A stretch of 63,054 nt of DNA, counting the filler, from Hyphochytrium catenoides (Eukaryota; Protista; Hyphochytriomycota): the NCBI GenBank assembly GCA_900088475.1. It is 5 parts of 5 records of this genome, joined end to end, with 100 filler letters (N's around TTAATTAATTAA, not from the genome) between each part and the next. Parts side by side here need not be neighbours in the genome. Positions count along the whole stretch, not along the records: positions 23,988 to 50,120 come from FLMG01000671.1; 4 more parts are not named here. One strand, 5' to 3'. A model generated the notes under the pieces. It was not told the origin of the DNA and did not search any database. It saw only the letters and a list, made by a program, of their open reading frames with translations. Positions 25,206 to 47,620 of this stretch are shown here, one piece after another; the first letter of the stretch is position 1; every line of letters begins with the position of its first letter. The position numbers and the translations under genes were made by a program.

Positions 25206-25909
25206 TTCTCTCTTCTCTCTCTCTCCCCACTCCTACCGTGGCACTTGACGCTCAATCTTCAGCGACATTTCGCGAGCTGCCACCCACTTTGTCTTTCTCG
25301 CTTTCTCATGATCGTTCTCTACCTTTTGCTCTTGCTGTTCCTCTTTCTGTGCGATGCTCTCGTACCGTTTCCAACCTCATTCCGGTTCGTAGGGTCACCG
25401 CGTATCACGGCTTTAAAGGAGCAAGTCATGAAAGACTTGGAGGAGATGGAAGAAGCTCAGGAGGATGACTATGATCTCGACCACCAGCAGCTGCGAGAGA
25501 AGTACGCTCCTACCTGCTGCTCTCTCTACTCCTCGTATCAGAGGCTCACTTCTCCAGCTTATCTTCTAAGTGTAGTCTAAAGAGTTTCATTGGGACGTGG
25601 CACAGTCGACGCATATCTGCTCTGTCTCTCTTTCTCTCTCTCTCTTTCTCGAGTCCGCGGTCCCATCCTCCTCCACGTTTTCTCTTCTTTGTCACTTCCC
25701 TGCGTCTCTTCCCCTGCGATGTGCTAAGAAACCTCAAAGGTTGTCCTTACTGATGTAGATCGCTGTCTTCAGGGTGCTCGCCAAGATCAGAAGGGCATTC
25801 ATGCTCTTCCTGGGTGATGGCACAGACTTGGAGAAGAGAGAGGCGAGAGTCGAAGTCTTTAGCATCTGGGATACTTCCTGGTGAGTTTGATTTNNNNNNN
25901 NNNNNNNNN

Positions 25910-25952
<43 letters not shown>

Positions 25953-28900
25953 CTGCTCTTTTATTCCCCTTCCTTGGGTGGAATGTATCCCCACCTTTTT
26001 CGCTTCTGCCACTTTTTCCTTCTCCTACGGCCCTAAATTCCTGCTCACTACCCTCTCGGTGGCCACCTTTCGCAGGCACATTCGCAACGGCGTTCACTAT
26101 GGACTGTTCACTCTTGGCGCCATCGGAGGCCAGGCCACTGAGGAACAGAAGGCGGAATGGCTTCCAAGAGCACTGACGCTTCAGATTTTTGGCTGTTTTG
26201 CGATGACAGAGTTGGGCCATGGCAGCAACCTAAGGGGTCTGGAGACCACTGCTCGCTATGACAAAGAGAGAGAAGAGTTTGTTATCAACACTCCCACGGA
26301 TACAGCCACGAAGTGGTAAATGTGCAGCCGCTAATGGTCCATTTGTATCGAGCACACTTCTCGGCAGTCTCCTCTGAGAAATATCCCCTTTAACTCCTCA
26401 AGCCGCCAATCGTTGATGAAGTGAGGGCCCTTCCTTTGTCTCTCGACGTTTCAACTTCCGTCAACGCTGTTCCGTCAGCCTCGTTCTAGCCTCAAATCTG
26501 ACTTTATGCCTCTGGTCTCTCTTACTGCCTTTCTCCAATGGATGGCTCTCCTTCGCGCTCTAGGTGGATAGGAGGAGCGGGGCAGACAGCCACACATGCG
26601 GCCGTGTACGCCCGTCTCATTCTCGGCGAGGAGGATAAGGGAGTGCAGACCTTCATCGTCCCTCTAAGAGACGAGGAACACCGCCCTCTTCCCGGTGTCA
26701 CCATTGGAGACTGCGGCAGGAAGATGGGCTTGGAGGGTGTCGACAACGGTTGGATTCAGGTTGAACGTCTCCTTCCTCAGCTTATCGCATCATGCCGGAC
26801 CTTTACAATCACACCTTTTCTCTCTTTTATATCTGGCATGTCTCTAGATTCGCGGTGACTCTAGCCCTTTCTTGTGCCCGCCCTCACGTCTCAACATTCC
26901 CTCCACATCCGCCCATTCTAACCCTCGTCTGTTCTCTTGCTCTCCTCTCTCTTCTCTCCTACACTTTTCCTGTCAAACTCTCACTTCAAATCTCCGGTGG
27001 ACAGTTCAATCATGTCCGCGTACCTCGCTCCCACATGCTTATGCGCTTTGCCGAAGTCTCCAAGGACGGTGAATACCGGGAGCCTCCTAAAGCTCAGCTC
27101 GCTTATGGAGCCCTACTTGGAACGAGGGGACAACTAATAAGATATTCAGTCAACGTCCTGAAAAAGGCACTGATGATCAGCGTCCGATACGGGTAAGAAA
27201 GACAGAGATATACAGATATGAAGTGACCAGCCTAACATTCGCTCTCGCACTCTCTCCCTCTCTCTCTCTGTCTTTCTCTCTTCTCTGTGCTTATAGCTCT
27301 TTAGCGTTTTTGCCTAATCTTGTTTTCCTTCTTTGAGAGTTGGGTCTCCATAATCATGGAAGACCGCCTTTAGACGTTCCTCCCCTGCGCATTCCCTTAG
27401 TGGCTTCTCGTCAAAACGCCTTCGATGAGTCTTTCTTACAGCTGTGTGTGCTCATAGGGCTGTACGGCGACAAGGTGGGGAAGAGGGAGAAAGAGAGTCT
27501 AAACTCTTGGACTATCAGTCCCATCAAGTCAAGCTAATGCCTGTTCTGGCTGCAGCTTACGCCTTTCACTGGATGGTAAGCCAAGAAATGTCTCTTTCTC
27601 GCTCTATATTGCCTGGTAGCTATGGATTCTGTCTTCTTGTCGCCACTGTCTTCGGGATGTTCTTTGCGCCACTCAAGAGCTCTTGTCCCTTCGTAGGGCG
27701 CCTACGTCATGCAGCTAAGTGCGCAATTAGAGGACCAAATGGACAATGAGGATATGAGCGGTATGGTGGCTTTCCCACGACCCTGAGCACTTGGGCTTCC
27801 AGGCTCTATGCTCGTGACTGCTCTCTCCTGTATGTATATGTCTACTGACTTGCATGCGTCTCTCTTATGTTCTGCCCAACCTCTAGACTTGCCAGATGTA
27901 CACGGCACAATGTCAGGACTGAAGGCCTACACTACTTGGTATGTGCTCGGGGCTATGGAAGGTGAGCTGATAGAATGCAAAGGGCAGGCGAGACGCTAGT
28001 CTGCGCTATTGTCGCTCGATGACGGCCAGGTTCTTCTTGTCTACTGGCCTCAATGGTCAACTTGATTCTAAAAAGGAGTATTTCAGCTTTATTCGTCTGA
28101 CGGCTGGCCCTCGCTGCCATGAGGTGTTACACTCTCTCACTTGGGAAGCTTGGTCTGACTCCTTCAGATCTCTGATGTTCGGTTTCCCTTCCTCCCATTG
28201 TGATGCCCTTTCCACTGTTGGTCCTCCAGTGTGCCGACAGGCATGTGGAGGCCATGGATACAGCGCTTACAACGGCCTCGCACGGACAATCTCAGACTTC
28301 GCCGTCTTCTGCACTTTTGAGGGTGATAACACTGTGATGGCTTTGCAGACGAGTCGCTATTTGATGGCTTCGTATGCCAAGTACAGCAGAGGCGAGAAGA
28401 TAACTGGCTCAGTGCGGTACGTACCAATGGTGTGGCTGTAGAAACAGAGAAAGAGAGACAGGGCATGACAGAAGGGCATCGAAGTATGATCCGAAGAGCT
28501 AAAGGTACCTTTCTATCTCCCCTTGCCCTTTAGGTATCTTGAGATGCTAAGCGGCGGCATGAACACCAAGGCCGAAGTTCCCACTCCTCAGCAGCTGCTA
28601 GACCCGGTACGGCAGAGAAGGAAGATTTGGTCATTCAAAACACGAAGATAGGGCAATCTAGAGGTGGCAACAAGATTGAAGAGACGGCGAAAAGCTTATT
28701 CACTGTTTTGCCCTTCTATGTCTGCTACTCCTATTCCTCGGCGGTGTTCAGGAGGTCCAGCTGGAGGCCATGCGCTTTCATGCCTCTCACTCTGTTGAGA
28801 GAGTCGCCCAGAGGCTGAAGAAGCTGAAAGAGCAGCAAGGATGCTCAGAGGACAAAGCAACTCTACAGTGCCAGGTAAAGTGGTTTCTCTCTTGTCATTA

Positions 28901-29875: not shown

Positions 29876-30923
29876 GAAGAGAGCAAGTTGGGAAGTTGAT
29901 GTGTGGGTTGAGCAAGCTGTGAGGAAAGGCGAACGGGAAGAGGAAGGAGAGTNNNNNNNNNNNNNNNNNNNNNNNNNNNNNNNNNNNNNNNNNNNNNNNN
30001 NNNNNNNNNNNNNNNNNNNNNNNNNNNNNNNNNNNNNNNNNNNNNNNNNNNNNNNNNNNNNNNNNNNNNNNNNNNNNNNNNNNNNNGTTTTGACTTGTAA
30101 CGTCCTCTTCATATTCCTAATATCAATTGCTATACGTTTTATTATACATAATATAACTTTGATCATTTACGATAGAACCTGCCTTCACCCCGTCTTCGTC
30201 CGCCCTTGCAGCTTCACGAAAGTTCTTGGTTCAACCTTGGGTCCTGGGGGATGTCTGTCTCCATGGTAGCCAAAACGGACTGTAAGTCACCTGCAGAAGG
30301 GAGAGAACAAGAAGTAGGAGAGAGAGGTAGAGGTACTCATAGGAACTTGCCGTGGTACAAAGACAAAGTGTCGAAAGAGACATGACAGAGGAAGTTCTGA
30401 TGATAGAAGGATGAGAGCTCTGACAAGAGAGAGCGAGAGCAGGAGAGAGAGAGAGAAAGATGGAGAGAGAGAGACAGAGAGAGACAGAGAGAAAGAGAGA
30501 GGGAGAGAGAGAGAGGGAGCGAGAGAGAGAAGGAGGAGACAGACAGAGAGAGAGAGAGAGAGAGAGAGAAGGGTCTTTTGCGGAGAAGGAAGAACACATT
30601 CAATCGACGAGTCATGGCACTCTTTCACAAATGGCCTGTCATCAGTTCGTAAGAACTGGACTCAATGACTGCTGATAATTAGGGAAGTGCTCTTTATAAA
30701 GCTTTGGGCCTTTGAAAAGAAGATACCAAGATTCGTGAGACTAGATTCCTCTGAAAGGCAAGCTTTCCTCCTTTTCCGCATACAGAGAGCAATACAAGTG
30801 AAGATCAAAACGCGAGGAACCGGACAAGGCCCGCCTACCTGTTACCATTGATCTTCTCTCTCTCTCTCTCTCTCTCGTCCTCCTCACACTTGTCGGCAGA
30901 GATATTCCCTTACGAGTGCGAGG

Positions 30924-32330: not shown

Positions 32331-35300
32331 TCAAACGTCTACTTGAGAATCATGAGAGTCAGTCCGAGGGTTCCCTTGTATCTCTGCAGCGGGAAGAGAA
32401 GCCAGCCGAGGGGCTTTGGTATGTAGGCCCTCATCTGCTTCGTCTCTCTTTCTCTTCTTTGCCGCAATATTTACCATATCGTCAAACTCTTCTTGAGAGT
32501 CATCTTCATCAGAGGCAACAGAGCTCTCATGAACTCTCTCATTACCTTCTTCTCCATCATCCGCCTCCTGCAGCAATTCGTCCCCAGGAGATCCGTCTTC
32601 GTCCGCCAGAGATTTCTTCTCTATGACGTCTCTTTTGTCCGCTCCTCTACATTCCTTCTGGTTGTTGGAGGTTTCGTTGCTTCTCTCCGTTTCTTTGATC
32701 CTCTCTCCATCATCGAGAGGCTCGTCAGTCCTGGTGGTCCCGCCGCTAAAATCTATCGAGCAAAGGATGTCTTACTTAACCAGTATTAGCGGACGCAAAG
32801 AATATGAACGATGAGTGGGAACTAGAGACGGGTTACATTTTGGGATAATATGGAAGTCAGAAAGAGGAATAATGGAGTACAGAGAATTTGTGTCCTATAC
32901 CTGCTCTCTTCTCTATCGCTTCAGGGTCGCTCCCTCCTTCAGCATCTCCTACCGGGCTGGATAATGTCTCATTCTCGCCAGAAGGACCAGCGGTGATTGA
33001 AGGCAGGGGATGCTTGCGTGGTCGCCCTCTCTTTCTTTTAGTAGTTTCGTCAGGTACATAATCATCGCAATTATGACCTTTCTTAGGCACTCCACATTTG
33101 CGGCAGAGATAGGTTCTTCGCCCTCCTGGGCCCAGCTCATCCTCAGAATCCAAACTCTCTATTCTGGCTGCGGAGGGGGTTCCGTTCCCCTTCTTCTTTC
33201 CTTTTAGTCCCATCTTCTTCTTTTTCTTTGCGCCTTTCACAAGGACTTTCTTCTTAAGCGAGTTGGACGAGACGATGACACCTTTGCCCTTCTTCTTTCC
33301 CTTGATAGTCGCTTTGCCTGTGATAGTCTTCTTGCGTAGCTTTCCCTTAAGTTTGCTCTTCTTCAAAGACTTCGTTGTTGCTGCTGATGCGGCCTTTGGC
33401 GTTACCAGGGTGCGCCTTCTGGTACGAATGTCTAAACATAGGATAAGAAGACGTAAGATCGAATAAATGTGGCTTGGAAAAAAGCCAGCTGGCAAAATTG
33501 ACATGGGCGACGTATAAGGATGTTCATGCCACCACTCCAACTAGTGTGGAGGCGTAATCGCACGGCGGGAAGCCTTTGTCAGAACAAGGTTCAAACTAGA
33601 ATCGCCGCCATCATCTCTGTGACATGATGGAGCCCTTTTACATTTACCTGCCGCCATTCCTACCCTTGGGCTTCTTGCGCCTTTCTCTCCTCCATTTGTC
33701 GCCACCCACGTCGAATAGGCCGTCGATAGCCTAAACTCTGTGTAAAAGTAGAAGACGAGGTCATCGTACGAGCGCTCGGGAAAGTACTTGAGCCGCATGA
33801 GGCGCAAGTTGCCTAGATAACACACAGATATGGCGACTTAGAACCAGTACTTTCCAGTGCATTTAGAACTTCTTCTCTGTTTCTACACATTGCCTCCTTC
33901 CCTCTTTGGTTAGTATTAAAGTAGTTCCTTCACGACTAAAAACGAGCGGGCTGAGGGCCCTACCTCTTTCCTCCATAAAAGAGCGCCTGAAAAGAAGCCT
34001 TTCGTCTCCCGAAAAGAGCTGAAAGCTGTATGGAATCTGCTCAATAGGAAGACCCCTTACCATCTCCAGAGCTGCATCTACATCATAGTTGTGCTTATGA
34101 AGGATCAAAAGGGCCGCCTAGAGAGAGGAAAAGATGCCCACGTTAACCGGACCAAGGAGCGAACGGCAAAAGAGATATTAAGACAATTGTAGAGGAATGA
34201 TACGGGCAGGACGGATTTCGGACCAGGAGCCGACGGAAGCTTGCAGAGTCGGCAAGGGATCGTACATAACAAAACCAGCCCCGTCTCTCTATCAAACTTC
34301 AGGGGTACTAGACCCAAGAACCTCCACCCCCCGATGTTCAATGTCGTCTTACGGGTTCAGACAGCGGCTTATCCAGTGCTCGAACCCCATTAAGGTAGGA
34401 CGATACGGAGGCAGTGTCAAGCTTGTTCGGAAGCCAAAGAGTGGTCCACCTCTCCGCTTCCTCGTTGTCTTCTGCTGTGTTTCCACCTTCTCTCTTTTCA
34501 TCAGAAAATTCGAAGAGCAGATCACTCAACCACGCTCGGCCGCCCACGACCTTGCCGGGGTGTCCAGGTTTGGTAGGCTGCACACAAAGAAGCAACAGGA
34601 ACAGATCAAAAGAGAAAGGAATTAGATTGAAAGCTGATTATAAGAGCAGCCAGCATCGGCGAAGATAAAATAGGATGACCGATGAGAATGTACAAACCTT
34701 TCTGGCCCTGTCCTTCTCTATCTCTTGAGCTGTTCGTCTCCTTACACGAGCAGAAAAGACCCCGGTCTCCACGATCTGCAGATGTGAAACAATGCAAGAA
34801 AGCGTCCGTGTAAAGCACAGCATTAGGGTCAAGTTAACAAGCTGTATCGGCTCCGGAATGCCTTGGACAAGGTAAAAGATTCAAAGCGGCGGTGCAAGGC
34901 TCACCTCATCGTCAGCTTGGTGCTCTGTATACTGGACCTCATACTGCGTTTTTACTCCCAGGACAATGGCCTCCCTCCACTCTGCCTTGATTTCATCGTA
35001 GACCATCACTCTTTCCCCAGACTTGATACTACTGGGTCTTGATACATATAAGGAGGGGGACTTTGCAGGAGAAAAGTGCCCCAACAAAAAAATGTTGTTT
35101 GCTTTATTCCCAGGTAACGGAAGGTCGTCGACATCAGCTTGGTATCGGGATCCGATTCTAGGCTTTGCCTCTGCTTTCTCTGGGAGAGCCACTGTCAAGC
35201 AAGAAGACTGTAAGAACTCATGGAGCTTCCACGGCTACGTAACCGCAGACATAGATATGAGAACTATTGGGCAGAGGCTATAGGTAGAAATACAGAGATC

Positions 35301-38300
35301 TTAAGTCCGGGCGACAAGGACATCTTTTGAAATCCGTTACGTCCCTCATTACCTCCTGTTCCTCCAAGGGAATGCCCTACACCAACACACTTTGGACAAA
35401 GCCAAGCGCCGTGGGGAATGGTCGCAAGGGGAGGGCGGAGACAGAAGGTATGGTACCCAAGCTCGCAGTTATCACAAAGTAACATCCAAGCTCCGTCCTT
35501 CACAACGTCGCTATCGTTAGTATAGGCAACAACTCAGGATAGACGAGAGTGAGTGAGAAGGACAAATGGGCCGCATGAGATGGAAGATTGAGGGAGCGAG
35601 CTCCCAAAATGCTCCATGTGAACATTTCTGTAGTTTGATGACTGCCCTATTCTCTTTCTTCTGACCTTGGCTTGTCTGCAAACTCCACAGCCCAAGCCAT
35701 CGCAATCATCATCCTTTTCTGCTAACTGTGCTGCCCTTATTTCCTCAGCGGTCATCTCTTCCTCGATCCAGGCCTCCACTTTAGAGGTGATGGCCATAAT
35801 GTTTGTTGACAGGGAACATTCTAGCCATCGCGCAAAAAGAGCGCCCTTTATCCCCTAAGGAAAAGCTTAGTGACTTCAGCCTTAGCAAGACTGAGAAAGA
35901 GACACAGAAAGGCCCATTTGCAACGAGTATCCACGCTAAGACCAGAGAGATGGTCGAGAGCTAAAGACAGAGAGGCGGCAATGGAAGGAGCGGGGAGTAG
36001 ACGTCAGAAGACGGGCATTGTTGTCTCTTCAACTGCCGTCACACTACCAAGGTAGAAGCCATGGCCCTTGGATCCATTCTTCTTTTAAGCAGAACTTGGT
36101 TCATCTTTTTGATGGAATTCTTTGTCCGAACTAGATCCTCAGCCTGCTTTTCTAGGCTTTCAGATACGGTCATGGGTTCAAGCTCTATGCTCTCCTATAA
36201 AAGTGTTAAAAAGTAGAGAAAAGCTCAGCCAGGATCCACGCGGCATTAACAGTTGGCCATCCTCTGAGCAGAGGTGCCGGTGCTTGTAGTCATTCAAAAA
36301 GGGCGCTAAAATCAAATAAGGATGCAGGAAACGCTATCGACAATAAAGTGCTAGAAGGACACAGTACCTCCGTCTTGGCTTTTCTTTTAGCACTCTTAAG
36401 CAGTATGTCGCCCTCTGGTTTGTGCACCATTTCAATCCAATTGATGATCTTCTCTATCATTCCGGCGCCAAGCACTGTGTTACCCCTCTCCCAGTTGCAG
36501 AAAATAGCGTATGTCAGTCCCTAATCAACCAAGAAGGGAGACATGTGAATTAGTCGATGCCCTTGCTGCCAATAGCTCTTCGTTGAAGACGGATCTAACT
36601 CTCAGCCTGCAACCCTGCTTTTGGTGTGAGATGTGCGAATAGTTGGCTGTTCTGATAGGGTCTCGTGCTGCCGCGAGTGGCCCCTTCATCCCCTCACCGG
36701 GTCCTTACCATTTGCCTGGTGATTCTTAGTTTCGTTAAATCGTGAAGGCTGATGAGGCGCCGCACTTCATTCAAACAGTCACCATTTTTGTCCTCCAACC
36801 TCTGTCGGACTAGCTCCGGATTCTTATGAAGCTCCCTTAGCTGGTTGGACGGAGTATAAAAACGAATAGTTGTCAAAGGGAAAGCTTATCGTCATAGAAA
36901 AAGCTGCCCACCGCAACCTTCTGCTAAGACCGAGAGCGAAGCAAAAGGCACAAAAGGGATACCCAGATGTAATAATGGCGCACCCACCTCTTCGTCTAAA
37001 GCATCTCTTGCCTCCCTCGTCAGCCTGTCGCTAACCCATTTGGTAATATAATCCATGGTCCCCTTATTTAGCAAATGGAGCCAGGGCAGACGCAGCCAGT
37101 TTTCGAGCATAGAGTAAGGGATACCCTTCGGCATAAACAGTCAGTTAGTTCCTCTCAGGTGATTAAGGGATGATAGAAACTACCAGCTCTTCTGCAACTC
37201 GCTCTCCGGAGAGGCCAAGCCTCTGCATGAGCGCCTGTAGCTTGGTGCAGTAGAGCTCTGATACCAGACGCTCAGTCTTCTCCTAAGAAGTACGCCGGGA
37301 CACAACAGAAGTAAATGAAAGACTAACCAAAGTCAAAATAACTTGCAAATTCAGTTCCAATTTGTGTGAAGAGAGAAAGCAACGATACTCAGGCTGCAAA
37401 GTTCGCTCTGACATTGTGTGGGAACTAATAAAGGCTTGGAATAGAGGAAGAACAAGTGCATGCAGGTACAGACAGAGGAAAGTGGTAGCCTAAGCACTTA
37501 AATGCGCGTTTGTGAGAATCCCTTACTGGTGGCGGCGGCAGGTCGTCCGCTGCTTTTGCTGCTCTATCGTCGTACCCCGGCAGGTTGAGTGCAAACTTCA
37601 CATGTCGACGATACGCATCCTCCCAAGTCCCACCCTTCGAAATAAGATCACTGCGGGCCAACAAATTTTTACCTGTCGGCAAGAAGCAGACGAGGGTGCA
37701 TTATTCGCAACCTTTTCACTTAAACAAAGATCCCCCAGGCCCTGACAACTCATATATCCACCCACAACCTCCTCCATCAAAAAGGTGTATAACCTCATCT
37801 TTTCATATCAAACGAGGAAACTGCCAAGAAGGAGATTCTCCATTCATGTCGTCCTTTCCCGAATCATATCTGCCAACCATCCCGTCGCTAACCATTCCGG
37901 CTCCCACTCCTTCTGTCTCCCGGCTTCAATATGAACTAACCTTCTTGATGCATGGAGAATTCTTCCTGTGATAGGGTGTGCTTCAAGAAAGCGAGGAGCG
38001 CCTCAGCCTGATCTTCCTTTACGTGCCATCGTCCGGGCTTGTGCACATACCTCCCAAGGTGTTGCGAGGTCATTCCCTACGAAGTAAAAATATGACGGAT
38101 TCAGGAGGTAGCATATTTGTCTAAGAGCTACAATACTCAGGAAGATTGGGTGACAAGTCACGTCGTAAGCGTGGCATAGGATGGACCGAAAGAGGCTATT
38201 GGCCAAACGCACTGATTTAGAATGGACACGACTGGAAAGATAACGACCTACCGTCTTGTCGGCAATTTCCCCCACTTTGATAAGGTATTTGAGTACTACA

Positions 38301-40089
38301 TAGCGCAGACTCATCGCCAGGAGAATTTTCGGAGGTAAGGGCTCCTCATAGCATTCTTCATCCTCCCTTGAGCGGTCCTGTGCATGAACTCCTTCCTCCT
38401 CCTCTTGTCGTGACCCTTCCCTTTTCAGCCTCTTTGCTGATGGCGGGACACTCTGAGCCTGTTTTCTGGTGCCATGGGTCTTTGCTATTGGAGTCCTGTT
38501 ATTTGTTGGAGATGGGGATGGAGCCGGTTTTTCTAATAGACAAAAGAGCAGTGTCAACAATTATGTCCGACAGCACTTCGAGCAGAGCATAGAGTTAGAG
38601 TAGAAAGCGCCCGGGCCCAGACAAACCAAAGACCTGGCTACGTGGCTTCATTTTAAAGGAAGGAAAATAAGTACTAATACTTCTTTATTCCTTCTGGACG
38701 CCTTACTCCGGTATTCTTCCACAGAGTCCTTTATCCAAGGAATGAGCAGCATGCTCTCCTTTTTCTCGTATCGTGCCTTTTCTTCGTCGTTGAGACGGGC
38801 GAGAGCCCACTTCTCCAAGTCCTCAGTCTGAGCGGCACTTAACATCTTCGGTTTGGCTGCAAATCGCCCGAGAAGTTGCGCAGCGATGCCCTGAAAACAG
38901 ATATAGTTTCTTTAGCGTTGCAATGTGCTGCAGCATTAGTGACTTTCTAATAAGTAACTTGAGGTGGCAAGGATGATCTGAAGAAGCGACCCAATAATTA
39001 AGCGACGTTTACTCGAAGTAGAACGCAGAACGGAAGACCTAATAGTGCCTACCACTTGAGAACCGATTTCTCTGGCCGACAGGCCATCTCGCCAACAAAG
39101 GTATTTGTAATACTCTGCAAGGAGCTCCTTCTTTGCTTGCAACGCATGATCAGAGCTCTCGGCCTTCCTTGAGATGGGGCGAGGGCTACTCTTGGGCGTG
39201 ACCGGCATCGAGCTACCCTCTTTTCCTCTCTCCGCCAGTCCAGTTGTAGATATTGTTGTCTCTACTCTTCTCGAACCAGGCTCAAGACTGCCCTCCGGAG
39301 AAGTGCGAGAGTGCGGAGCAAGGCCGCCGAATGTCTGATACAATGAAGTCAGTTTCCGGCACTATAATAGGTAAGATAAGACCTTGCCCTGACCTTGTCC
39401 TTTTCTTTAGCCGCGAATGGCAGACGTTGGGGCCCGTCTTCTGGATCGATAGACTTTCTTACACTATATAGCCGGTCAGCCAGTACATCTTGATGGCTTA
39501 GCTGCTTGCTGACGCTTGCGGCAGTGTTGGCGACACGAGGAATACTAGGACTAGAGCGAGAAGTAGGAGAAATTGCAAAGCTTTTCCCGACATTAGCCTC
39601 AAGCGAGGAGGGAGCAATCCTTGCCTCCGACGAGAAAACATCATAACTTCGTTTTTTCAGTGGTTGTCTATCATCGCCTTTTTTGGGGCTAGCATGGGAG
39701 CTCTTCTCCGAACGGCTGTCGATATTTGGTACACTCTGCGCATTGATATCGGCGGGACCTTTAGCAACTGGTGGACGAGATGTCTCCTCTTCCATCATCG
39801 TGTTCTTCTGGTTGGCCCCTAATTTCTGGGACTCAACCTTGGAAGGAGAGACAACCTGCCGCCTGGGAGATGAAGCATTGTTAAAGCTTAATCTGTCAAC
39901 ATCCATAGCCTTCTCGGTGTTGCCTTCTTCAATTGAAGGTCGCCGCTTCCTAACATCCTCCCGAGCGGCTCCTTCTTCCTCCTCCATTTCTTTTTTATCC
40001 CTTGTCCTGTACAGTGTTGTGGAGAACCGGTTATAAGCTTTTTCAACTCTGGACCGTTCAGGACTTGTGGAGTTGGTAGCTACCTTCAA
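32331..40089 (-). CDS. Large multi-exon chromatin/transcription regulator: 5x Cro/C1-like HTH, PHD finger, ELM2 with a Tudor-like insert, SANT, CxxC-H-C Zn knuckle, AT-hook, acidic tail (5' end unresolved, may extend to ~41 kb)
   Basis: PHD: CGVC...[35 protein letters not shown]2: [11 protein letters not shown]...LWLP...[16 protein letters not shown]: [13 protein letters not shown]...[14 protein letters not shown]. Zn knuckle: [17 protein letters not shown]-hook: KRKRGRPRK. The HTH repeats are described under findings. Confidence 0.85.
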
Positions 40090-41604: not shown

Positions 41605-44362
41605 ATGGCTAGTCAACAGTCTTTGAAGTCACATGCTTGTGCAGGTCTGTCAATATCTCCTCCGGCAGGTGTCAGTCGCAGTATTTCACTCTTACTCGTA
41701 AGCAGCATGTGGGAAACTGGTGTACGCTATGGAGGATAAGGTCAAAGTGGATAACAACGAGCTCCACAGAGGCTGCTTTAAGTGTGCGCATTGCAACTGT
41801 CAGCTCACCTTGAACAACTTCTCCAAGGCGGGAAGTGAACTACTTTGCAAGGTGCACTACTTCGAGCGCTTCCACAAAAATAACAGCTACGGAGGAGAGG
41901 ACAAATTTTCTCAGAAGTCGAAGGCAGGGTCCTCTGCAATGCTCAGAGCAAAAGGTGCGTGAAGTTAACGATGAAGTAGAAGACCTAGAAGATGATGAAA
42001 GACAGATGAGAACAGGTGTTTCAACTCAGAAAGAAGAGAGGGGACACGGGGCTTTATGACCCCTGCTAAGTGGGAAACTAACCAGCTCTTTTGAACCTGT
42101 CTGCCGCTGTCATTAGGTACGATGTCTTCATCTAAGTCGCATCTTCAGTGCCGGTCATGAAAGAAACTCTTAATGTAGGCAACCCTGGAGGCATAGTCTC
42201 CCCGACTCACAGCGGTAACCTATCAGTCACCCCTGAAGGGTCCAAGGAGGGACTCAAAGATAGTCCGCCACCACTGGTGTCAAGGTATGAGCTAGCTTTA
42301 CTGCTCTGCTTCGTCTCACGCCCTGGCTCACCCTATCCCTCTCGCTACCTCTGCGACTACTTTATCCCACTTTCTCACTCTGTCTTGCAACCGTCAAGTC
42401 ACGTGGAGCTTCCTCGTACAGCGTCAGCTCCTGTCATAGTGAAGGCGTCTATCAAGGAGAGGTTCAATACCTCTCAGCCTGCCCTTGAGGCAGATGGACA
42501 ATCCAAAGGTGGAGAAAGACCACCGACCTCACGGCGGGTCTCCATGATTGACACAATGCAAAGCAGTCAGAGTCAAAAACTTTGCTTCGGTAATGCAGTG
42601 GACGGACAAGATAGTCGACAATCTGCCTTGTCATACCTAGAGCTTCGTTCTCTAACAAACTAGCACTTTCGCTCCTTAAATATTTGTAGGCAGGCTTCAT
42701 TTTATCTCTGACGTTCTGGTGATTTGTTGTCTCTTTCTCACCCGTTTCTCTCTCCTTTATGCAAATTCCTTACTTTTAGTCTGTCAAAAGAATGTGTATC
42801 CTATGGATAAGAAGGAGGTGATTGATGCTCGCACCGTCCACAAAGCTTGCCTCAAGTGCACAACGTGCCTCGCGCAACTCCTGCCGGCAGACGTCACGCA
42901 TTGTGAGTCATCAGCTCCGTCCACTTGGCGCCAAACTCTAACGCCTTGGAGCTTCTTTGTTGCCTCTATTTTATGCAGTGCGGCAGGACGCCAAGCTCGT
43001 GCTTCTTTGCAAGAAGCATCTGGCTACCAACTCTCTTATTGAAGAGGCTAAGTCAGAGGCATCACCAAAGGTTGATGTTCTCTCATCAAGCTCTCTCTGC
43101 TCCGTGCCAAGCAAGTGTCCCAATGGACCGTCGTCCCTCTCAGTGGCGAAGAGTGTAACCCCTTCCCAAGACGGATCTCGGTTGGCCCAGGCGGGATCAC
43201 CCTCTAGCCCAAGGGATGGTCTACACGGTGGACAACAAAGCTNNNNNNNNNNNNNNNNNNNNNNNNNNNNNNNNNNNNNNNNNNNNNNNNNNNNNNNNNN
43301 NNNNNNNNNNNNNNNNNNNNNNNNNNNNNNNNNNNNNNNNNNNNNNTAGTCTTTCTGTGAAGGGTGAGTACGTGCAGACTCAAGACGCAATTCTCTAGCC
43401 GTGGGCCGCCCCGCGTTATCGTACACTTAGATCCTAAAGTCTAGGCAGCCTGACTCCTAACCATTCCTTTCGAGTCCACGCTTTCTTATATAACATTCCC
43501 ATTAAAGTTCAGTCTTCTCTGTTAACCTTCGACTACTTCACAGAGAGCTCGAGCAAACTCCCTCTCACTCCATCTGGGACGGGCCCACGGCGAACGAGCT
43601 TGGTGTCTCCTACATCTTCTTGCATTTGTGAAGGTAATGATTAGGCCAGAACCATGTTCTGTCGGCATCATCGTAGCTTCTTAGCTTAGCCACTGGCGCT
43701 AACACCTCTTTCGCATGCCTTTCCCTGACCTCCAGCATGTAAACAGAGGGTCTACCAAATGGATGAAAAGGTGAGCTCAAGCCCTTCCCTTCTTCAGCTT
43801 TTCAAAAACTATGCATCGCCATCACTTGGAAGTAGAGAACTAACTACTTCTTTCGATTGAACTGCAAACCCAGATCACGATTGATGGCAAGAACTACCAT
43901 GGGAAGTGCTTCAAATGTCAAAAGTGCAAGGTAGCTCTCTCTCCCACTCTATTTCACCTCTCCTAGTCCCTAACCAGACATTCATCCTGCTCCTGCTCTC
44001 CCTGGTCGGCTTGTACTCTTGTCCCTAACGCGACATGCCGTGGTAGTGCCGTTTAACGCTGAAGACGTTCACGAAAGGTAAGACAAGGAGCATGACCAAC
44101 CCCTAACAGCTCGACTCGGTGCTTTTGACGCTCCCCTGTCTCTCACCTGTGCCTTTGGTGTCTGTCTATAGGGGGTGATGTGCTGTTATGCCAAACGCAC
44201 TACATGGAGCACTTCCACACGACGAACAAGTATCTCAATAGCTCCTTAGAGAGCGACGAGAAGCAACGCAGAGCTGGAGAGTTGGAGAAAGCGAAGACCG
44301 AAGGCGAAGAGCCAAATGTTGAACCTCTCCGGCCAGTAGAGCTAACTAAGTGTCTGACCTGA
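41605..44362 (+). CDS. Protein with three LIM domains separated by Ser/Pro-rich linkers (multi-exon, spans an N gap)
   Basis: LIM1: CA|ACGKLVYAMED..HRGCFKCAHC..LCKVH. LIM2: CF|VCQKNVYPMD..HKACLKCTTC..LCKKH. LIM3: CE|ACKQRVYQMDEK|..HGKCFKCQKCK|..LCQTH. Confidence 0.9.
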
Positions 44363-45029: not shown

Positions 45030-46517
45030 CTATACAATGTACGCGTAGTGAGGAGACTCCACCTTTACCTTCCGACTCGCTGCTTTCCGACCATCGGCTG
45101 AGAGAGGACTCTCAACAAACGATGAGTCATTCTCTCGCATCACAATCCCTTTCTTGCTATGGTTAGCCCAATAGGCCGTGGCATAGGGGTGGGGCCGGCC
45201 TGTGAATCTCTTCCTGCAGAAGCGTTCAAAGGGCTGAATGAGCTGCTCCAAGACCTCCAGGTTAATGCTGACAAAGAGATCAGGTGGAAGACCAGGAGAT
45301 TCAGGTCCTAAGAAGTCAATCTGCTGGATGACAGGCGCCTTACACGCAGCAGAGACTGACACTTGCATCGTGGAAGAGTCGCTGAAGTACAGCGTCCTGA
45401 TGTTCTTTGCCATTTCGTTCCTTCTTCTACCACTCGGTTCCATCTGATAATCCAGGCTCTCGGCATAGAACTGTCCCAAGCTTACACAGAACTCATCCAC
45501 AAGGTAGAGCGTGAGATCCTCTAAGAGCTCTCTGTCATCTAGAGCTGCAGCCAGTTGAACGGCGGTTGTTATAACTCCCTTTCCGTCGGCTGTGCTTTCG
45601 AAGTGGCTTGCTGTCCAGGTCTCGCTGGGAGTTCCTGCAGTCGTCATGGATGCAGTAGAAGCCTTCTTGAGGGCTCGATACGACGAACGAAGGGGAAGGA
45701 CAGAAAGCGTGATGCTGCACGTGTAGAGGAGAGAGGCATAGAGAACGGTAGCCCAGGCAGTATAAGCATTCTCGTTCAGCCCTTCTGCCTTTTCCTTCCC
45801 CTTTCCTTCCTTCCTGTCGTGTTCCTGAGCTTCAGCGAAGAAGCCTGAGACCTGCCAGAACACGACAGCGATGAAGAGAATGGAGGCACAGACTTTGTAC
45901 CGCTGACTCCAGCGGAACGCATCATCAAGCCGATGGAGAAGCAACGCGATGATGCAGAAACAAGCGGGGAAGATGCAGACAGTTGCGACATTCCCAATAG
46001 CCTCTACCAAGCCTACCGTAGAGCAGGCTTCATTCTGCACGGTGCCCATCACGACCTCTACGTCCATAGTTATTAGCCTTAGAGCCGGCACCAAAGCCAG
46101 TAACAGGCCCATACTAGCGATGGCCGTCGCGCCGAACCGCTTGGAGCGGAAGAGAGGGAGATATTGCATGAGATACTTGTTGGCAGAGTTCTTTTGCTTT
46201 GTCAGCAGTGTATTCTGCTGATATCGAATGAAGATCTGTGAGCCTTCATAGATCACCAAGGTCCCAAGAGGAAAGCACCCAGCGTTCCAGACGATGACAG
46301 CAACGTAGCAGGGAAGCTCCGGCAGTATAAGTGGAAGGAGTGTGCCTATCACGGCATAGGCTACAGAGAGCTCTCGCAGCACAGCCACTTTCATGCCGAT
46401 AGCATGCAGAGGATAAAGTTCTCGCCTCCGCCATAGAAGGACAGCGCAGACGATAGAAGTAAGTAAAGACAGACCGCCCAGACCTTGGCTCACAGCTTTC
46501 GCGACATCCGCGGACAT
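45030..46517 (-). CDS. Intronless 7TM-RGS protein (seven transmembrane helices + C-terminal RGS domain)
   Basis: Seven hydrophobic segments with loop motifs RRRELYPL, LPCY and DDAF. The C-terminus L..ALDD...YLVDEFC...FY....Y...AKNIRTLYF..S..QVSVS...DLF....EV..L...FERF fits an RGS box. Confidence 0.82.
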   Translation of the reverse strand: MSADVAKAVSQGLGGLSLLTSIVCAVLLWRRRELYPLHAIGMKVAVLRELSVAYAVIGTLLPLILPELPCYVAVIVWNAGCFPLGTLVIYEGSQIFIRYQQNTLLTKQKNSANKYLMQYLPLFRSKRFGATAIASMGLLLALVPALRLITMDVEVVMGTVQNEACSTVGLVEAIGNVATVCIFPACFCIIALLLHRLDDAFRWSQRYKVCASILFIAVVFWQVSGFFAEAQEHDRKEGKGKEKAEGLNENAYTAWATVLYASLLYTCSITLSVLPLRSSYRALKKASTASMTTAGTPSETWTASHFESTADGKGVITTAVQLAAALDDRELLEDLTLYLVDEFCVSLGQFYAESLDYQMEPSGRRRNEMAKNIRTLYFSDSSTMQVSVSAACKAPVIQQIDFLGPESPGLPPDLFVSINLEVLEQLIQPFERFCRKRFTGRPHPYATAYWANHSKKGIVMRENDSSFVESPLSADGRKAASRKVKVESPHYAYIV

Positions 46518-46913: not shown

Positions 46914-46959
<46 letters not shown>

Positions 46960-47577
46960 CTCTCTCCTCTCTCTCTTTGTCTCTCTCTCTCTTCCTCTCT
47001 TTTCTCTCTATCGTCGCTAAAACTCTCCTTCGCTGTAGTATGGATCTTCTCTGGCAGGTAGTCTCCCTCGTCAACAACTCTATCTACTTCTCCTCTCTAT
47101 CTTTGCGTGCCATTGAACCTCTCTCCTCCTCAAGAGGAACTTAGCTTGCGGAGCAGCACAATCACTGGGAAGTCCATGATTTTGGTTGGCGCATCACTTC
47201 TTGACACGCCTGACCCGAAACATCCCAGGACAGACAAAACCCTGCTCCTTCTTCCTTCTCCTCCCAGGCGTGGCGCCAACTTCAAAGGCAAATGCTTGTG
47301 CGGCTCACAGCGGAAGGTCAGTTGTACCAAAAGAGACGACGACCAAGCCCAGTTCCAAATTTGGTCTCCTCACCCCACCACGTCCTTGACCTTCCTCACT
47401 ACTTCTCTCTGCCTTCTTTCTCTCTTTTCCTCGCTCATTTTTTGTTTGGGCCCCTCCCACATTTGTTCCTCCATTCTATCTCTCCCTTCGCTCTCTCTCT
47501 CTCTCTCCCTTTCTCCCTTTCTCTCTCTTTCTCAGTCCCTTCTCTCTTCTTTCTTTCTCTCTTCTTTCTTTCTTTCT

Positions 47578-47620
<43 letters not shown>

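What the first reader, a model, noticed from the sequence alone, without database searches (positions are those of the whole stretch)
35760..39130. Five tandem Cro/C1 (lambda-repressor-like) HTH repeats, each split by a phase-0 intron at the identical position before the turn glycine
Seen after manual splicing (minus strand). A (39053|38890): [19 protein letters not shown]|[24 protein letters not shown] (38252|38076): [19 protein letters not shown]|[24 protein letters not shown] (37184|37125): [19 protein letters not shown]|[22 protein letters not shown] (36709|36520): [19 protein letters not shown]|[23 protein letters not shown] (36048|35854): [19 protein letters not shown]|[21 protein letters not shown]. 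All fit the XRE pattern L....GL....A..L-G.....L..W..G, with a terminal Trp helix like HNF1/POU-specific-type domains. The array is invisible in the ORF track because every recognition helix lies on a separate exon. Inference: an intron-bearing HTH module was amplified five-fold and diverged in its recognition helices, giving a modular DNA-reading array coupled to PHD/ELM2-SANT. Because all five introns are phase 0 at the same site, exon skipping could join the first half of one repeat to the recognition helix of another, producing in-frame chimeric HTHs. I know of no described family with this architecture.
Basis: partly seen in the sequence, partly recalled or inferred. Interest (0 to 1): 0.85.

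Follow-up and report, generated by a model that had tools for sequence, protein, structure and literature searches.

The report
Five intron-split HTH repeats, chromatin protein
A 21-exon eukaryotic gene encodes five diverged copies of a small helix-turn-helix domain of the lambda-repressor/HNF1/POU/CUT fold, each cut by an intron at the same spot, joined to a PHD finger: a real and unusual domain arrangement, but its expression and DNA binding are untested.

Summary
With 15 more GT-AG introns they give one open 1467-codon reading frame on the minus strand (39987..32331). Anchored only on the five intron positions, with no gaps, the five 36-residue blocks score +211 (sum-of-pairs BLOSUM62). Random anchors give -297±55 (z 9.2) and shifted registers give z 9.5. 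Each unit beats 2000 shuffles against an HMM built from the other four. There are exactly five copies.

Unit C (exons 7+8) folds with high confidence from its single sequence (pLDDT 88.9). Its structural neighbours are almost all lambda-repressor-like domains: HNF-1A Z 9.9, HNF-1B 8.7, ONECUT CUT 8.3, XRE 7.4, Oct4 POU-specific 7.3, lambda cI 6.6. The intron falls between the last residue of helix 2 and the turn glycine.

Limits:
- No RNA run was listed and no homologue was found.
- Unit B modelled poorly. Units A, D and E were not modelled.
- Pfam gives only sub-threshold generic HTH hits, for unit C alone.
- The PHD finger is solid and shares exon 12 with unit E. ELM2 and SANT are weak.
- The units are near-neutral in charge, so DNA binding is inferred.
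- The exon-skipping idea is correct arithmetic with no evidence behind it.

Verdict: a new variant of a known kind, of moderate interest.

The parts
32331..39987 (-). Predicted 21-exon gene: ATG at 39987-39985, stop codon at 32333-32331, 1467 aa
   Evidence: Hand-built model with all introns GT-AG and no internal stop. There is no transcript or homologue support.
38762..39142 (-). Unit A (aa 263-335): first half 39142-39053, 162-nt phase-0 intron 39052-38891, second half 38890-38762
37942..38338 (-). Unit B (aa 419-492): first half 38338-38252, 175-nt phase-0 intron 38251-38077, second half 38076-37942
   Evidence: The AF2 model has low confidence.
36991..37282 (-). Unit C (aa 542-619): exon 7 at 37282-37184, 58-nt phase-0 intron 37183-37126, second half 37125-36991 (in exon 8)
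   Evidence: AF2 pLDDT 88.9 with four helices. Fold neighbours are HNF1, CUT, POU and XRE proteins. Pfam HTH_23 and HTH_3 are sub-threshold.
36398..36831 (-). Unit D (aa 624-705): first half 36831-36709, 188-nt phase-0 intron 36708-36521, second half 36520-36398. It carries the XRE-like W-E-R-G motif after helix 3.
35726..36155 (-). Unit E (aa 729-807): first half 36155-36048, 193-nt phase-0 intron 36047-35855, second half 35854-35726
   Evidence: A second GT lies 3 nt downstream (36044) and scores about the same.
35384..35707 (-). PHD finger (aa 814-865), split by the intron 35665-35498. Its first Cys pair is on the same exon as the second half of unit E.
   Evidence: Pfam PHD E = 4.3e-11, 43.1 bits against a cut-off of 24. 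Spliced sequence.
33724..35162 (-). Possible ELM2 (N-terminal motif 35162-35106, C-terminal part 34409-34061) with an inserted Tudor/Agenet-like stretch (35024-34905), followed by a SANT-like stretch (34018-33724)
   Evidence: ELM2 E = 0.025 and Agenet E = 0.093, both below cut-off. SANT is absent from Pfam. NCoR1 SANT in the PDB at E = 1.3. Otherwise read by eye from the pattern.
33004..33431 (-). Lys-rich basic region (net charge +37 over aa 1151-1300), a CxxC..HxC knuckle (33111-33064) and an AT-hook (33042-33004)
   Evidence: Pfam AT_hook E = 0.043, below cut-off. Charges, coordinates.

Best explanation
This is a eukaryotic nuclear protein gene. Its middle part (aa 263-807) is an array of five anciently duplicated domains of about 75 residues each. 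The domains belong to the lambda-repressor-like helix-turn-helix superfamily, with the layout: long helix 1, helix 2, turn glycine, helix 3, loop, long helix 4 carrying a conserved Trp or Phe.

The ancestral module already carried a phase-0 intron between helix 2 and the turn glycine. Tandem duplication of this two-exon module produced the array. Units C, D and E still sit on exon pairs bounded by phase-0 introns on both sides. A and B form a second, closer pair.

The array is fused in one reading frame to a PHD finger. Downstream lie a probable diverged ELM2/SANT-like region, a very basic AT-hook region and an acidic tail.

The most likely function (inferred, not shown) is a chromatin regulator. 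The HTH units, helped by the basic AT-hook region, would place it on DNA. The PHD finger would read a histone tail. The ELM2/SANT-like part would recruit a partner such as a class I deacetylase.
For: - Junctions and frame.
- Repeat statistics with the register fixed by the intron: z 9.2 and 9.5.
- Leave-one-out HMMs.
- Exactly five copies, none elsewhere in the piece.
- Splice matrices trained on the other introns pick the same junctions for A to D.
- Unit C from its single sequence in AF2: pLDDT 88.9, pTM 0.77, helices 2-22, 26-33, 37-45 and 54-77, with the junction between residues 33 and 34.
- Foldseek's top 50 are almost all XRE, HipB, SinR, C-protein, lambda cI, HNF1 or MBF1 (probability up to 0.98, TM about 0.6).
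- VIA-align: HNF-1A Z 9.9 over 77 of 79 residues, HNF-1B 8.7, ONECUT 8.3, XRE 7.4, Oct4 7.3, Cux2 7.0, SATB1 6.9, lambda cI 6.6.
- Weak sequence echoes: HTH_23 at E = 1e-3 and HTH_3 at 6e-3; phage regulators at 1.5e-3.
- PHD E = 4e-11, sharing exon 12 with unit E.
- No DNA-level repeats in the array, so the duplications are old.
Against: - No transcript evidence: no RNA run was listed.
- No homologue in any search. The two ORF-based word-index searches are uninformative about the full-length protein because of the length window.
- Only one of five units was modelled with confidence. Unit B gave pLDDT 66.9 and random fold matches.
- Foldseek E-values are all 0.29 or higher. Z of 8-10 is middling for helical models by the tool's own note.
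- Pfam finds nothing in units A, B, D or E.
- The units are nearly uncharged and C is acidic, which is unusual for DNA-binding HTH domains.
- ELM2 and SANT are below every threshold.
Confidence: 0.7

Rival explanations
1. The five units have the lambda-repressor-like fold but no longer read DNA. They would act as protein-protein or scaffold modules, as the HTH of MBF1 does on the ribosome. DNA contact would come from the Lys-rich AT-hook region.
For: Net charge of the units is -2 to +2, and unit C has pI 5.4 with an acidic or hydrophobic helix 3 (IPYSMLENW). Residues 1151-1300 carry +37 and an AT-hook. MBF1 appears among the fold neighbours.
Against: Units B and D keep XRE-like recognition-helix motifs (G-M-T-S-Q-H-L and N-W-E-R-G). 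The best structural neighbours are DNA-bound HNF1, CUT and POU domains. Neither point is a test of binding.
Confidence: 0.2
2. The units are ordinary three-helix 'homeodomain-like' HTHs of the transposase or paired type (HTH_23/HTH_28), for example from a domesticated transposase, and not lambda-repressor-like.
For: The best Pfam hit of unit C is HTH_23 (E = 1e-3). HTH_28 and HTH_Tnp_1 also appear weakly.
Against: All these hits are below the gathering scores and cover only helix 2, the turn and helix 3. Neither structure search puts a paired, Tc3 or homeodomain chain among its top 50; nearly all rows are lambda-repressor-like proteins, and the conserved fourth helix is part of the match. No transposase domain was seen in the model or in the pieces of it scanned against Pfam.
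Confidence: 0.04
3. The array is an artefact of hand splicing, or lies in a dead gene. The exon halves would not be joined in vivo as proposed.
For: No RNA run was listed, no homologue supports any exon, and the donor of intron E scores only at the 57th percentile.
Against: A stop-free 1467-codon path through 20 canonical introns is unlikely by chance. Independently trained splice matrices choose the same junctions for A to D. The spliced unit C folds with pLDDT 88.9 into a known fold. The five joins recreate the same motif in register.
Confidence: 0.04
4. The five introns were gained independently at the same proto-splice site (G|GG, created by the conserved glycine codon) after an intron-less module had been duplicated.
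For: All five junctions read G|GG(N), a typical proto-splice context.
Against: It needs five parallel gains, all in phase 0 at one alignment column, against one ancestral intron. The G|GG context also follows simply from the conserved Gly.
Confidence: 0.02

Closest known systems
HNF1 (HNF-1A/HNF-1B) POU-specific-like domain
   Same: It is the best structural neighbour of unit C and covers the whole model: Z 9.9 over 77 of 79 residues for 8pi8, and Z 8.7 for 2h8r. It shares the long first helix and the long last helix around an HTH core.
   Different: Identity is about 12%. Pfam HNF-1_N gives no hit. There is no dimerisation domain and no homeodomain. Here there are five copies instead of one.
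CUT repeats of CUX, ONECUT and SATB proteins
   Same: Eukaryotic nuclear proteins with one to three tandem domains of the same superfamily. Z 8.3 for ONECUT, 7.0 for Cux2 and 6.9 for SATB1.
   Different: Pfam CUT gives no match. There is no homeodomain. There are five units, each split by an intron at the turn, and they are fused to a PHD finger.
POU-specific domain (Oct4, Brn-5, POU2F3)
   Same: Four-helix lambda-repressor-like fold with a hydrophobic or Trp-bearing last helix. Z 6.6-7.3.
   Different: Pfam Pou gives no match, and there is no POU homeodomain.
Bacterial and phage XRE / Cro-C1 (Pfam HTH_3) regulators: HipB, SinR, C.Esp1396I, lambda cI
   Same: They share the fold (Foldseek probability up to 0.98, Z 6-7.4). 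They share the sequence pattern helix 2, G, hydrophobic, x4, L, x2, W/F/Y. Unit D keeps W-E-R-G and unit B keeps G-M-T-S-Q.
   Different: HTH_3 scores 17.1 bits against a cut-off of 23, and for unit C only. The gene is eukaryotic and intron-bearing, the domain is repeated five times in one chain, and no dimerisation or sensor domain is present.
ELM2-SANT corepressor scaffolds (MTA, MIER, RCOR/CoREST, MIDEAS) and fungal Snt2-type PHD-SANT proteins
   Same: A PHD finger is followed by an ELM2-like N-terminal motif ([10 protein letters not shown]), an ELM2-like C-terminal helix and a SANT-like stretch in the usual order.
   Different: ELM2 and SANT are both below threshold. About 140 residues, including a Tudor/Agenet-like stretch, are inserted into the ELM2 region. 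I do not know of any of these families carrying a lambda-repressor-like array (own knowledge; two literature searches found none).

Membership tests
Lambda repressor-like DNA-binding domain superfamily (fold level) | Compact bundle of 4-5 helices in which helices 2 and 3 form the HTH | tested here: met
   Unit C only. AF2 pLDDT 88.9 with four helices. Nearly all of the top 50 matches in each of the three structure searches are members of this superfamily. Units A, B, D and E are inferred from homology. The unit B model is inconclusive.
Pfam HTH_3 (Cro/C1, XRE) | Score at or above the Pfam gathering threshold (23 bits) | tested here: not met
   Unit C scores 17.1 bits, E = 0.0059, matching profile positions 1-30 of 55. 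Units A, B, D and E give no hit.
Pfam CUT / Pou / HNF-1_N | Any hit to the family HMM | tested here: not met
   None is listed at E up to 10 for any unit. HMMER's filters drop most hits above about 0.1, so very weak matches cannot be excluded.
CUT, POU and HNF homeobox classes | A homeodomain C-terminal to the lambda-repressor-like domain | tested here: not met
   No homeobox hit in the pieces scanned. The model has PHD, ELM2-like and SANT-like parts in that place.
PHD finger | Cys4-His-Cys3 pattern and the Pfam threshold (24 bits) | tested here: met
   43.1 bits, E = 4.3e-11, from exon 13 alone. The spliced sequence supplies the first CxxC.
ELM2 domain | Pfam threshold (21.7 bits) | tested here: not met
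   15.9 bits, E = 0.025, covering only 14 residues of the N-terminal motif.
SANT / Myb-like | A Pfam or PDB sequence match | tested here: inconclusive
   No Pfam hit. The only PDB hit is the NCoR1 SANT domain, E = 1.3, aligned over the expected 43 residues.
Sequence-specific DNA-binding transcription factor | Demonstrated DNA binding | not testable with these tools
   Only indirect evidence: near-neutral charge of the units and motifs in helix 3.

The most novel reading that the evidence does not exclude
The five units are the first seen members of an undescribed eukaryotic family of intron-split lambda-repressor-like domains. The family would be specifically related to the HNF1/POU-specific/CUT type and would occur outside the homeobox context. 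It would act as a modular, multi-site DNA reader wired directly to a histone reader and a deacetylase-recruiting module. If the source organism lies outside animals, the family would bear on where the animal POU, CUT and HNF1 domains came from.
Probability: 0.12. Interest if true: 0.8.

Novelty: new variant of a known kind. Interest (0 to 1): 0.5.

Why it matters
Lambda-repressor-like HTH domains are everywhere in bacteria and phages. In eukaryotes they are known mainly as MBF1 and as the animal POU-specific, CUT and HNF1 domains, which sit next to a homeodomain. An array of five such domains without a homeodomain, fused to chromatin-reader modules, would add a new way in which this fold is used in eukaryotes. 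It also gives an unusually clean example of a domain array built by duplicating a two-exon module, because the intron marks the same structural position in all five copies. Its closest structural neighbour is HNF1. If the source organism proves informative, the gene becomes relevant to the unresolved origin of the animal POU, CUT and HNF1 domains. Without the organism, transcripts or relatives, this remains a lead.

Tried and rejected
- RNA evidence: the look-up of sequencing runs with kind 'rna' listed nothing. That used the only search, so read laying could not be run.
- Full-library HMMER with the ELM2/Tudor exon gave only spurious repeat proteins at 36% identity or less. The gene's product and close orthologues are apparently not in that collection.
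- The search for homologous proteins with the N-terminal ORF, the neighbouring 495-aa ORF and spliced unit C all came back blank. The first two say nothing about the full-length protein because of the length window.
- A metagenome scan with exon 12 found nothing.
- phmmer of unit C and a profile of the second halves against PDB sequences gave nothing meaningful.
- blastp of the protein against itself shows no off-diagonal hit. The repeats are visible only to anchored or profile methods.
- DNA-level repeats: none. Rfam: none.
- The ESM Atlas feature search on exon 12 was uninformative. The Atlas fold search failed five times because the remote machine did not answer.
- Three literature searches found no description of this architecture.
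- The spliced units have no reference form. I did not hand the five-unit alignment to the remote tools because that would need much typed text. So whole-domain profile searches against the PDB and profile-profile comparisons were not run. The five-unit HMM was used only locally.
Full report
**What is in the sequence.** The region lies in a eukaryotic, intron-rich piece with about 49% G+C. I read the minus strand. The five upstream half-exons end at 39053, 38252, 37184, 36709 and 36048, each followed by GT. The five downstream half-exons begin at 38890, 38076, 37125, 36520 and 35854, each preceded by AG and each starting with a glycine codon.

I extended the model in both directions by hand, using GT-AG sites and frame continuity. 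The result is a 21-exon gene (ATG 39987, stop 32331) with a stop-free CDS of 4404 nt, 1467 aa. Sixteen of the twenty donors follow a G. Most read GTAAG or GTAGG. Several introns carry CTAAC- or CTAAT-like branch sites. The five introns of interest are 162, 175, 58, 188 and 193 nt long, and all are phase 0.

**Are the five units more than chance?** Yes. The register was fixed only by the intron position, with no gaps and no optimisation.
- The five 36-residue blocks (22 before the junction, 14 after) give a sum-of-pairs BLOSUM62 score of +211.
- Five random anchors in the same protein give -297±55 (z 9.2; 0 of 20000 reach it).
- Shuffled units give z 14.
- Shifting each unit independently by up to 8 residues gives at most +18 (z 9.5).
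- Any five of the gene's other introns used as anchors give at most -100.

MAFFT, run without the anchor, places the five junction glycines in one column. An HMM built from any four units scores the fifth at 36.4 (A), 11.8 (B), 24.6 (C), 15.9 (D) and 20.9 (E) bits, against a maximum of about 9 for 2000 shuffles of that unit. The five-unit HMM finds exactly five domains in the protein (aa 263-335, 419-492, 542-619, 624-705, 729-807) and no further copy in the six-frame translation of the piece.

Pairwise identity is low, 4-11 of 36 positions. Plain blastp of the protein against itself sees nothing, and there is no DNA-level repeat. The duplications are therefore old. A and B are closest to each other, and C, D and E form a second group.

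**Are the junctions credible without RNA?** No RNA run was listed, so transcripts could not be checked. As a substitute I trained donor and acceptor matrices on the other 15 introns of the model and scored every GT..AG pair that keeps the frame open.
- For E it ranks fourth of 33, within about 1 bit of the best. A second GT lies 3 nt downstream.

The spliced product of exons 7+8 also folds with high confidence into a known fold (next section). That is independent support for at least that junction.

**What fold is it?** Unit C (aa 542-620) was modelled from its single sequence.
- AF2 gave mean pLDDT 88.9 and pTM 0.77, with helices at 2-22, 26-33, 37-45 and 54-77.
- The exon junction lies between residue 33, the last residue of helix 2, and Gly34, the turn.
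- Foldseek against the PDB gave no E-value below 0.29. Even so, its top 50 are almost entirely HipB, SinR, phage 186 and lambda regulators, XRE-family proteins, R-M controller proteins, HNF-1A and MBF1 (probability up to 0.98, TM about 0.55-0.62, rmsd 2.3-2.6 Å over about 60 residues).
- The Foldseek-independent search of 48,161 representatives put HNF-1A (Z 8.6, 77 aligned) and the ONECUT CUT domain (Z 8.3) on top. Then came an XRE regulator (7.4), the MuB N-terminal domain, Oct4 and Brn-5 POU-specific domains (7.3, 7.2), Cux2 and SATB CUT domains (about 7) and lambda cI (6.6).
- Re-aligning Foldseek's list gave HNF-1A Z 9.9 and HNF-1B Z 8.7, about 1.3-2.5 units above the rest.

By the tool's own note, Z of 8-10 is middling for helical models. 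The weight therefore rests on three searches agreeing on one superfamily and on coverage of the whole domain.

At sequence level only unit C gives sub-threshold generic HTH hits: HTH_23 at E = 1e-3, HTH_3 at 6e-3 with 17.1 against 23 bits, then HTH_ParB and HTH_31. PHROGs adds phage regulators at E = 1.5e-3 and weaker. Units A, B, D and E hit nothing in Pfam. Read directly from the sequence, unit D keeps the XRE signature W-E-R-G after helix 3, and unit B keeps G-M-T-S-Q-H-L.

The second AF2 job, on the most divergent unit B, gave a poor model. Its pLDDT was 66.9 and pTM 0.40, with helices 1 and 2 merged. Its fold matches were random helical proteins at Z 5.1 or below.

**Context in the protein.** Exon 12 (35854-35666) encodes both the second half of unit E and the first CxxC of a PHD finger. 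Exon 13 carries the rest of the finger, with Pfam PHD E = 4.3e-11. The array and the PHD finger are therefore in one protein whatever happens at the other splice sites.

Downstream I read the following parts:
- an ELM2-like N-terminal motif;
- a Tudor/Agenet-like insert;
- an ELM2-like C-terminal helix;
- a SANT-like stretch;
- a Lys-rich region with net charge +37, a small Cys/His knuckle and an AT-hook;
- an acidic tail.

Support for ELM2 and SANT is weak. ELM2 scores 15.9 against 21.7 bits and Agenet E = 0.093. Pfam finds no SANT. The only PDB hit is the NCoR1 SANT domain at E = 1.3, although it aligns over the expected residues.

**How it probably works.**
- Shown: five homologous units; the lambda-repressor-like fold of one of them; the intron at the same structural position in all five; fusion to a PHD finger.
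- Inferred, origin: one intron-bearing two-exon module was duplicated in tandem. C, D and E still sit on exon pairs with phase-0 boundaries on both sides (99+138, 132+153 and 147+189 nt). Five independent gains at a G|GG proto-splice site are possible but much less parsimonious.
- Inferred, function: the protein is a chromatin regulator. The HTH units and the AT-hook region bind DNA, the PHD finger reads a histone tail, and the ELM2/SANT-like part recruits a partner.

DNA binding by the units is uncertain. Their net charges are only -2 to +2, and unit C has pI 5.4 with a hydrophobic and acidic helix 3. A scaffold role for some or all units is the main rival.

The exon groups between equivalent junctions sum to 465, 381, 270 and 300 nt, all multiples of three. 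Nothing here tests it.

**Comparison with known families and novelty.** At fold level this belongs to the lambda-repressor-like superfamily. It works most like the multi-CUT and POU/HNF1 proteins of animals or like XRE regulators. It is not a demonstrable member of Pfam HTH_3, CUT, Pou or HNF-1_N, because all thresholds were missed, and it lacks the homeodomain that defines the CUT, POU and HNF classes.

I found no homologue of the parts I could query and no paper describing such an architecture. A review of fungal transcription factors does record lambda-repressor-like domains combined with homeodomains in zygomycetes (PMC5415576). So the fold outside animals is not new in itself.

The searches were limited in three ways. 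The word-index search sees only proteins of similar length. No whole-domain profile search of eukaryotic proteomes was possible. I therefore rate this a new variant of a known kind, with moderate interest. The interest would rise if relatives, transcripts or the organism's position make the link to HNF1, POU and CUT domains specific.

Noticed in passing
window 26792-28441 (+): Exons of an acyl-CoA oxidase gene. Pfam ACOX_C_alpha1 E = 7e-19. The best PDB relatives are human and rat ACOX1, then Yarrowia, then plant enzymes.
   Followed up: partly
window 45030-46517 (-): An intron-less 495-aa ORF with several hydrophobic segments. The length-limited word search found no homologue. Function unknown.
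   Followed up: partly
window 24002-25947, 30545-30876, 46918-47611: Many (CT)n/(GA)n microsatellites that create spurious 'SLSLSL' ORFs. Assembly gaps (runs of N) lie at 25894-25909, 29953-30086 and 43243-43346.
   Followed up: no
window 36047/36044 (-): The donor of the unit E intron reads GTAGTG. A second GT 3 nt downstream scores about the same, and using it would add one Val before the turn glycine.
   Followed up: partly
window 35024-34905 (-): A Tudor/Agenet-like stretch (Agenet E = 0.093) sits between the N-terminal and C-terminal parts of the putative ELM2 region. In the full-library search it matched only repetitive proteins weakly.
   Followed up: partly
window 33111-33004 (-): A small CxxC-x6-H-x-C knuckle followed by an AT-hook (KRKRGRPRK), inside a Lys-rich region with net charge +37.
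   Followed up: no
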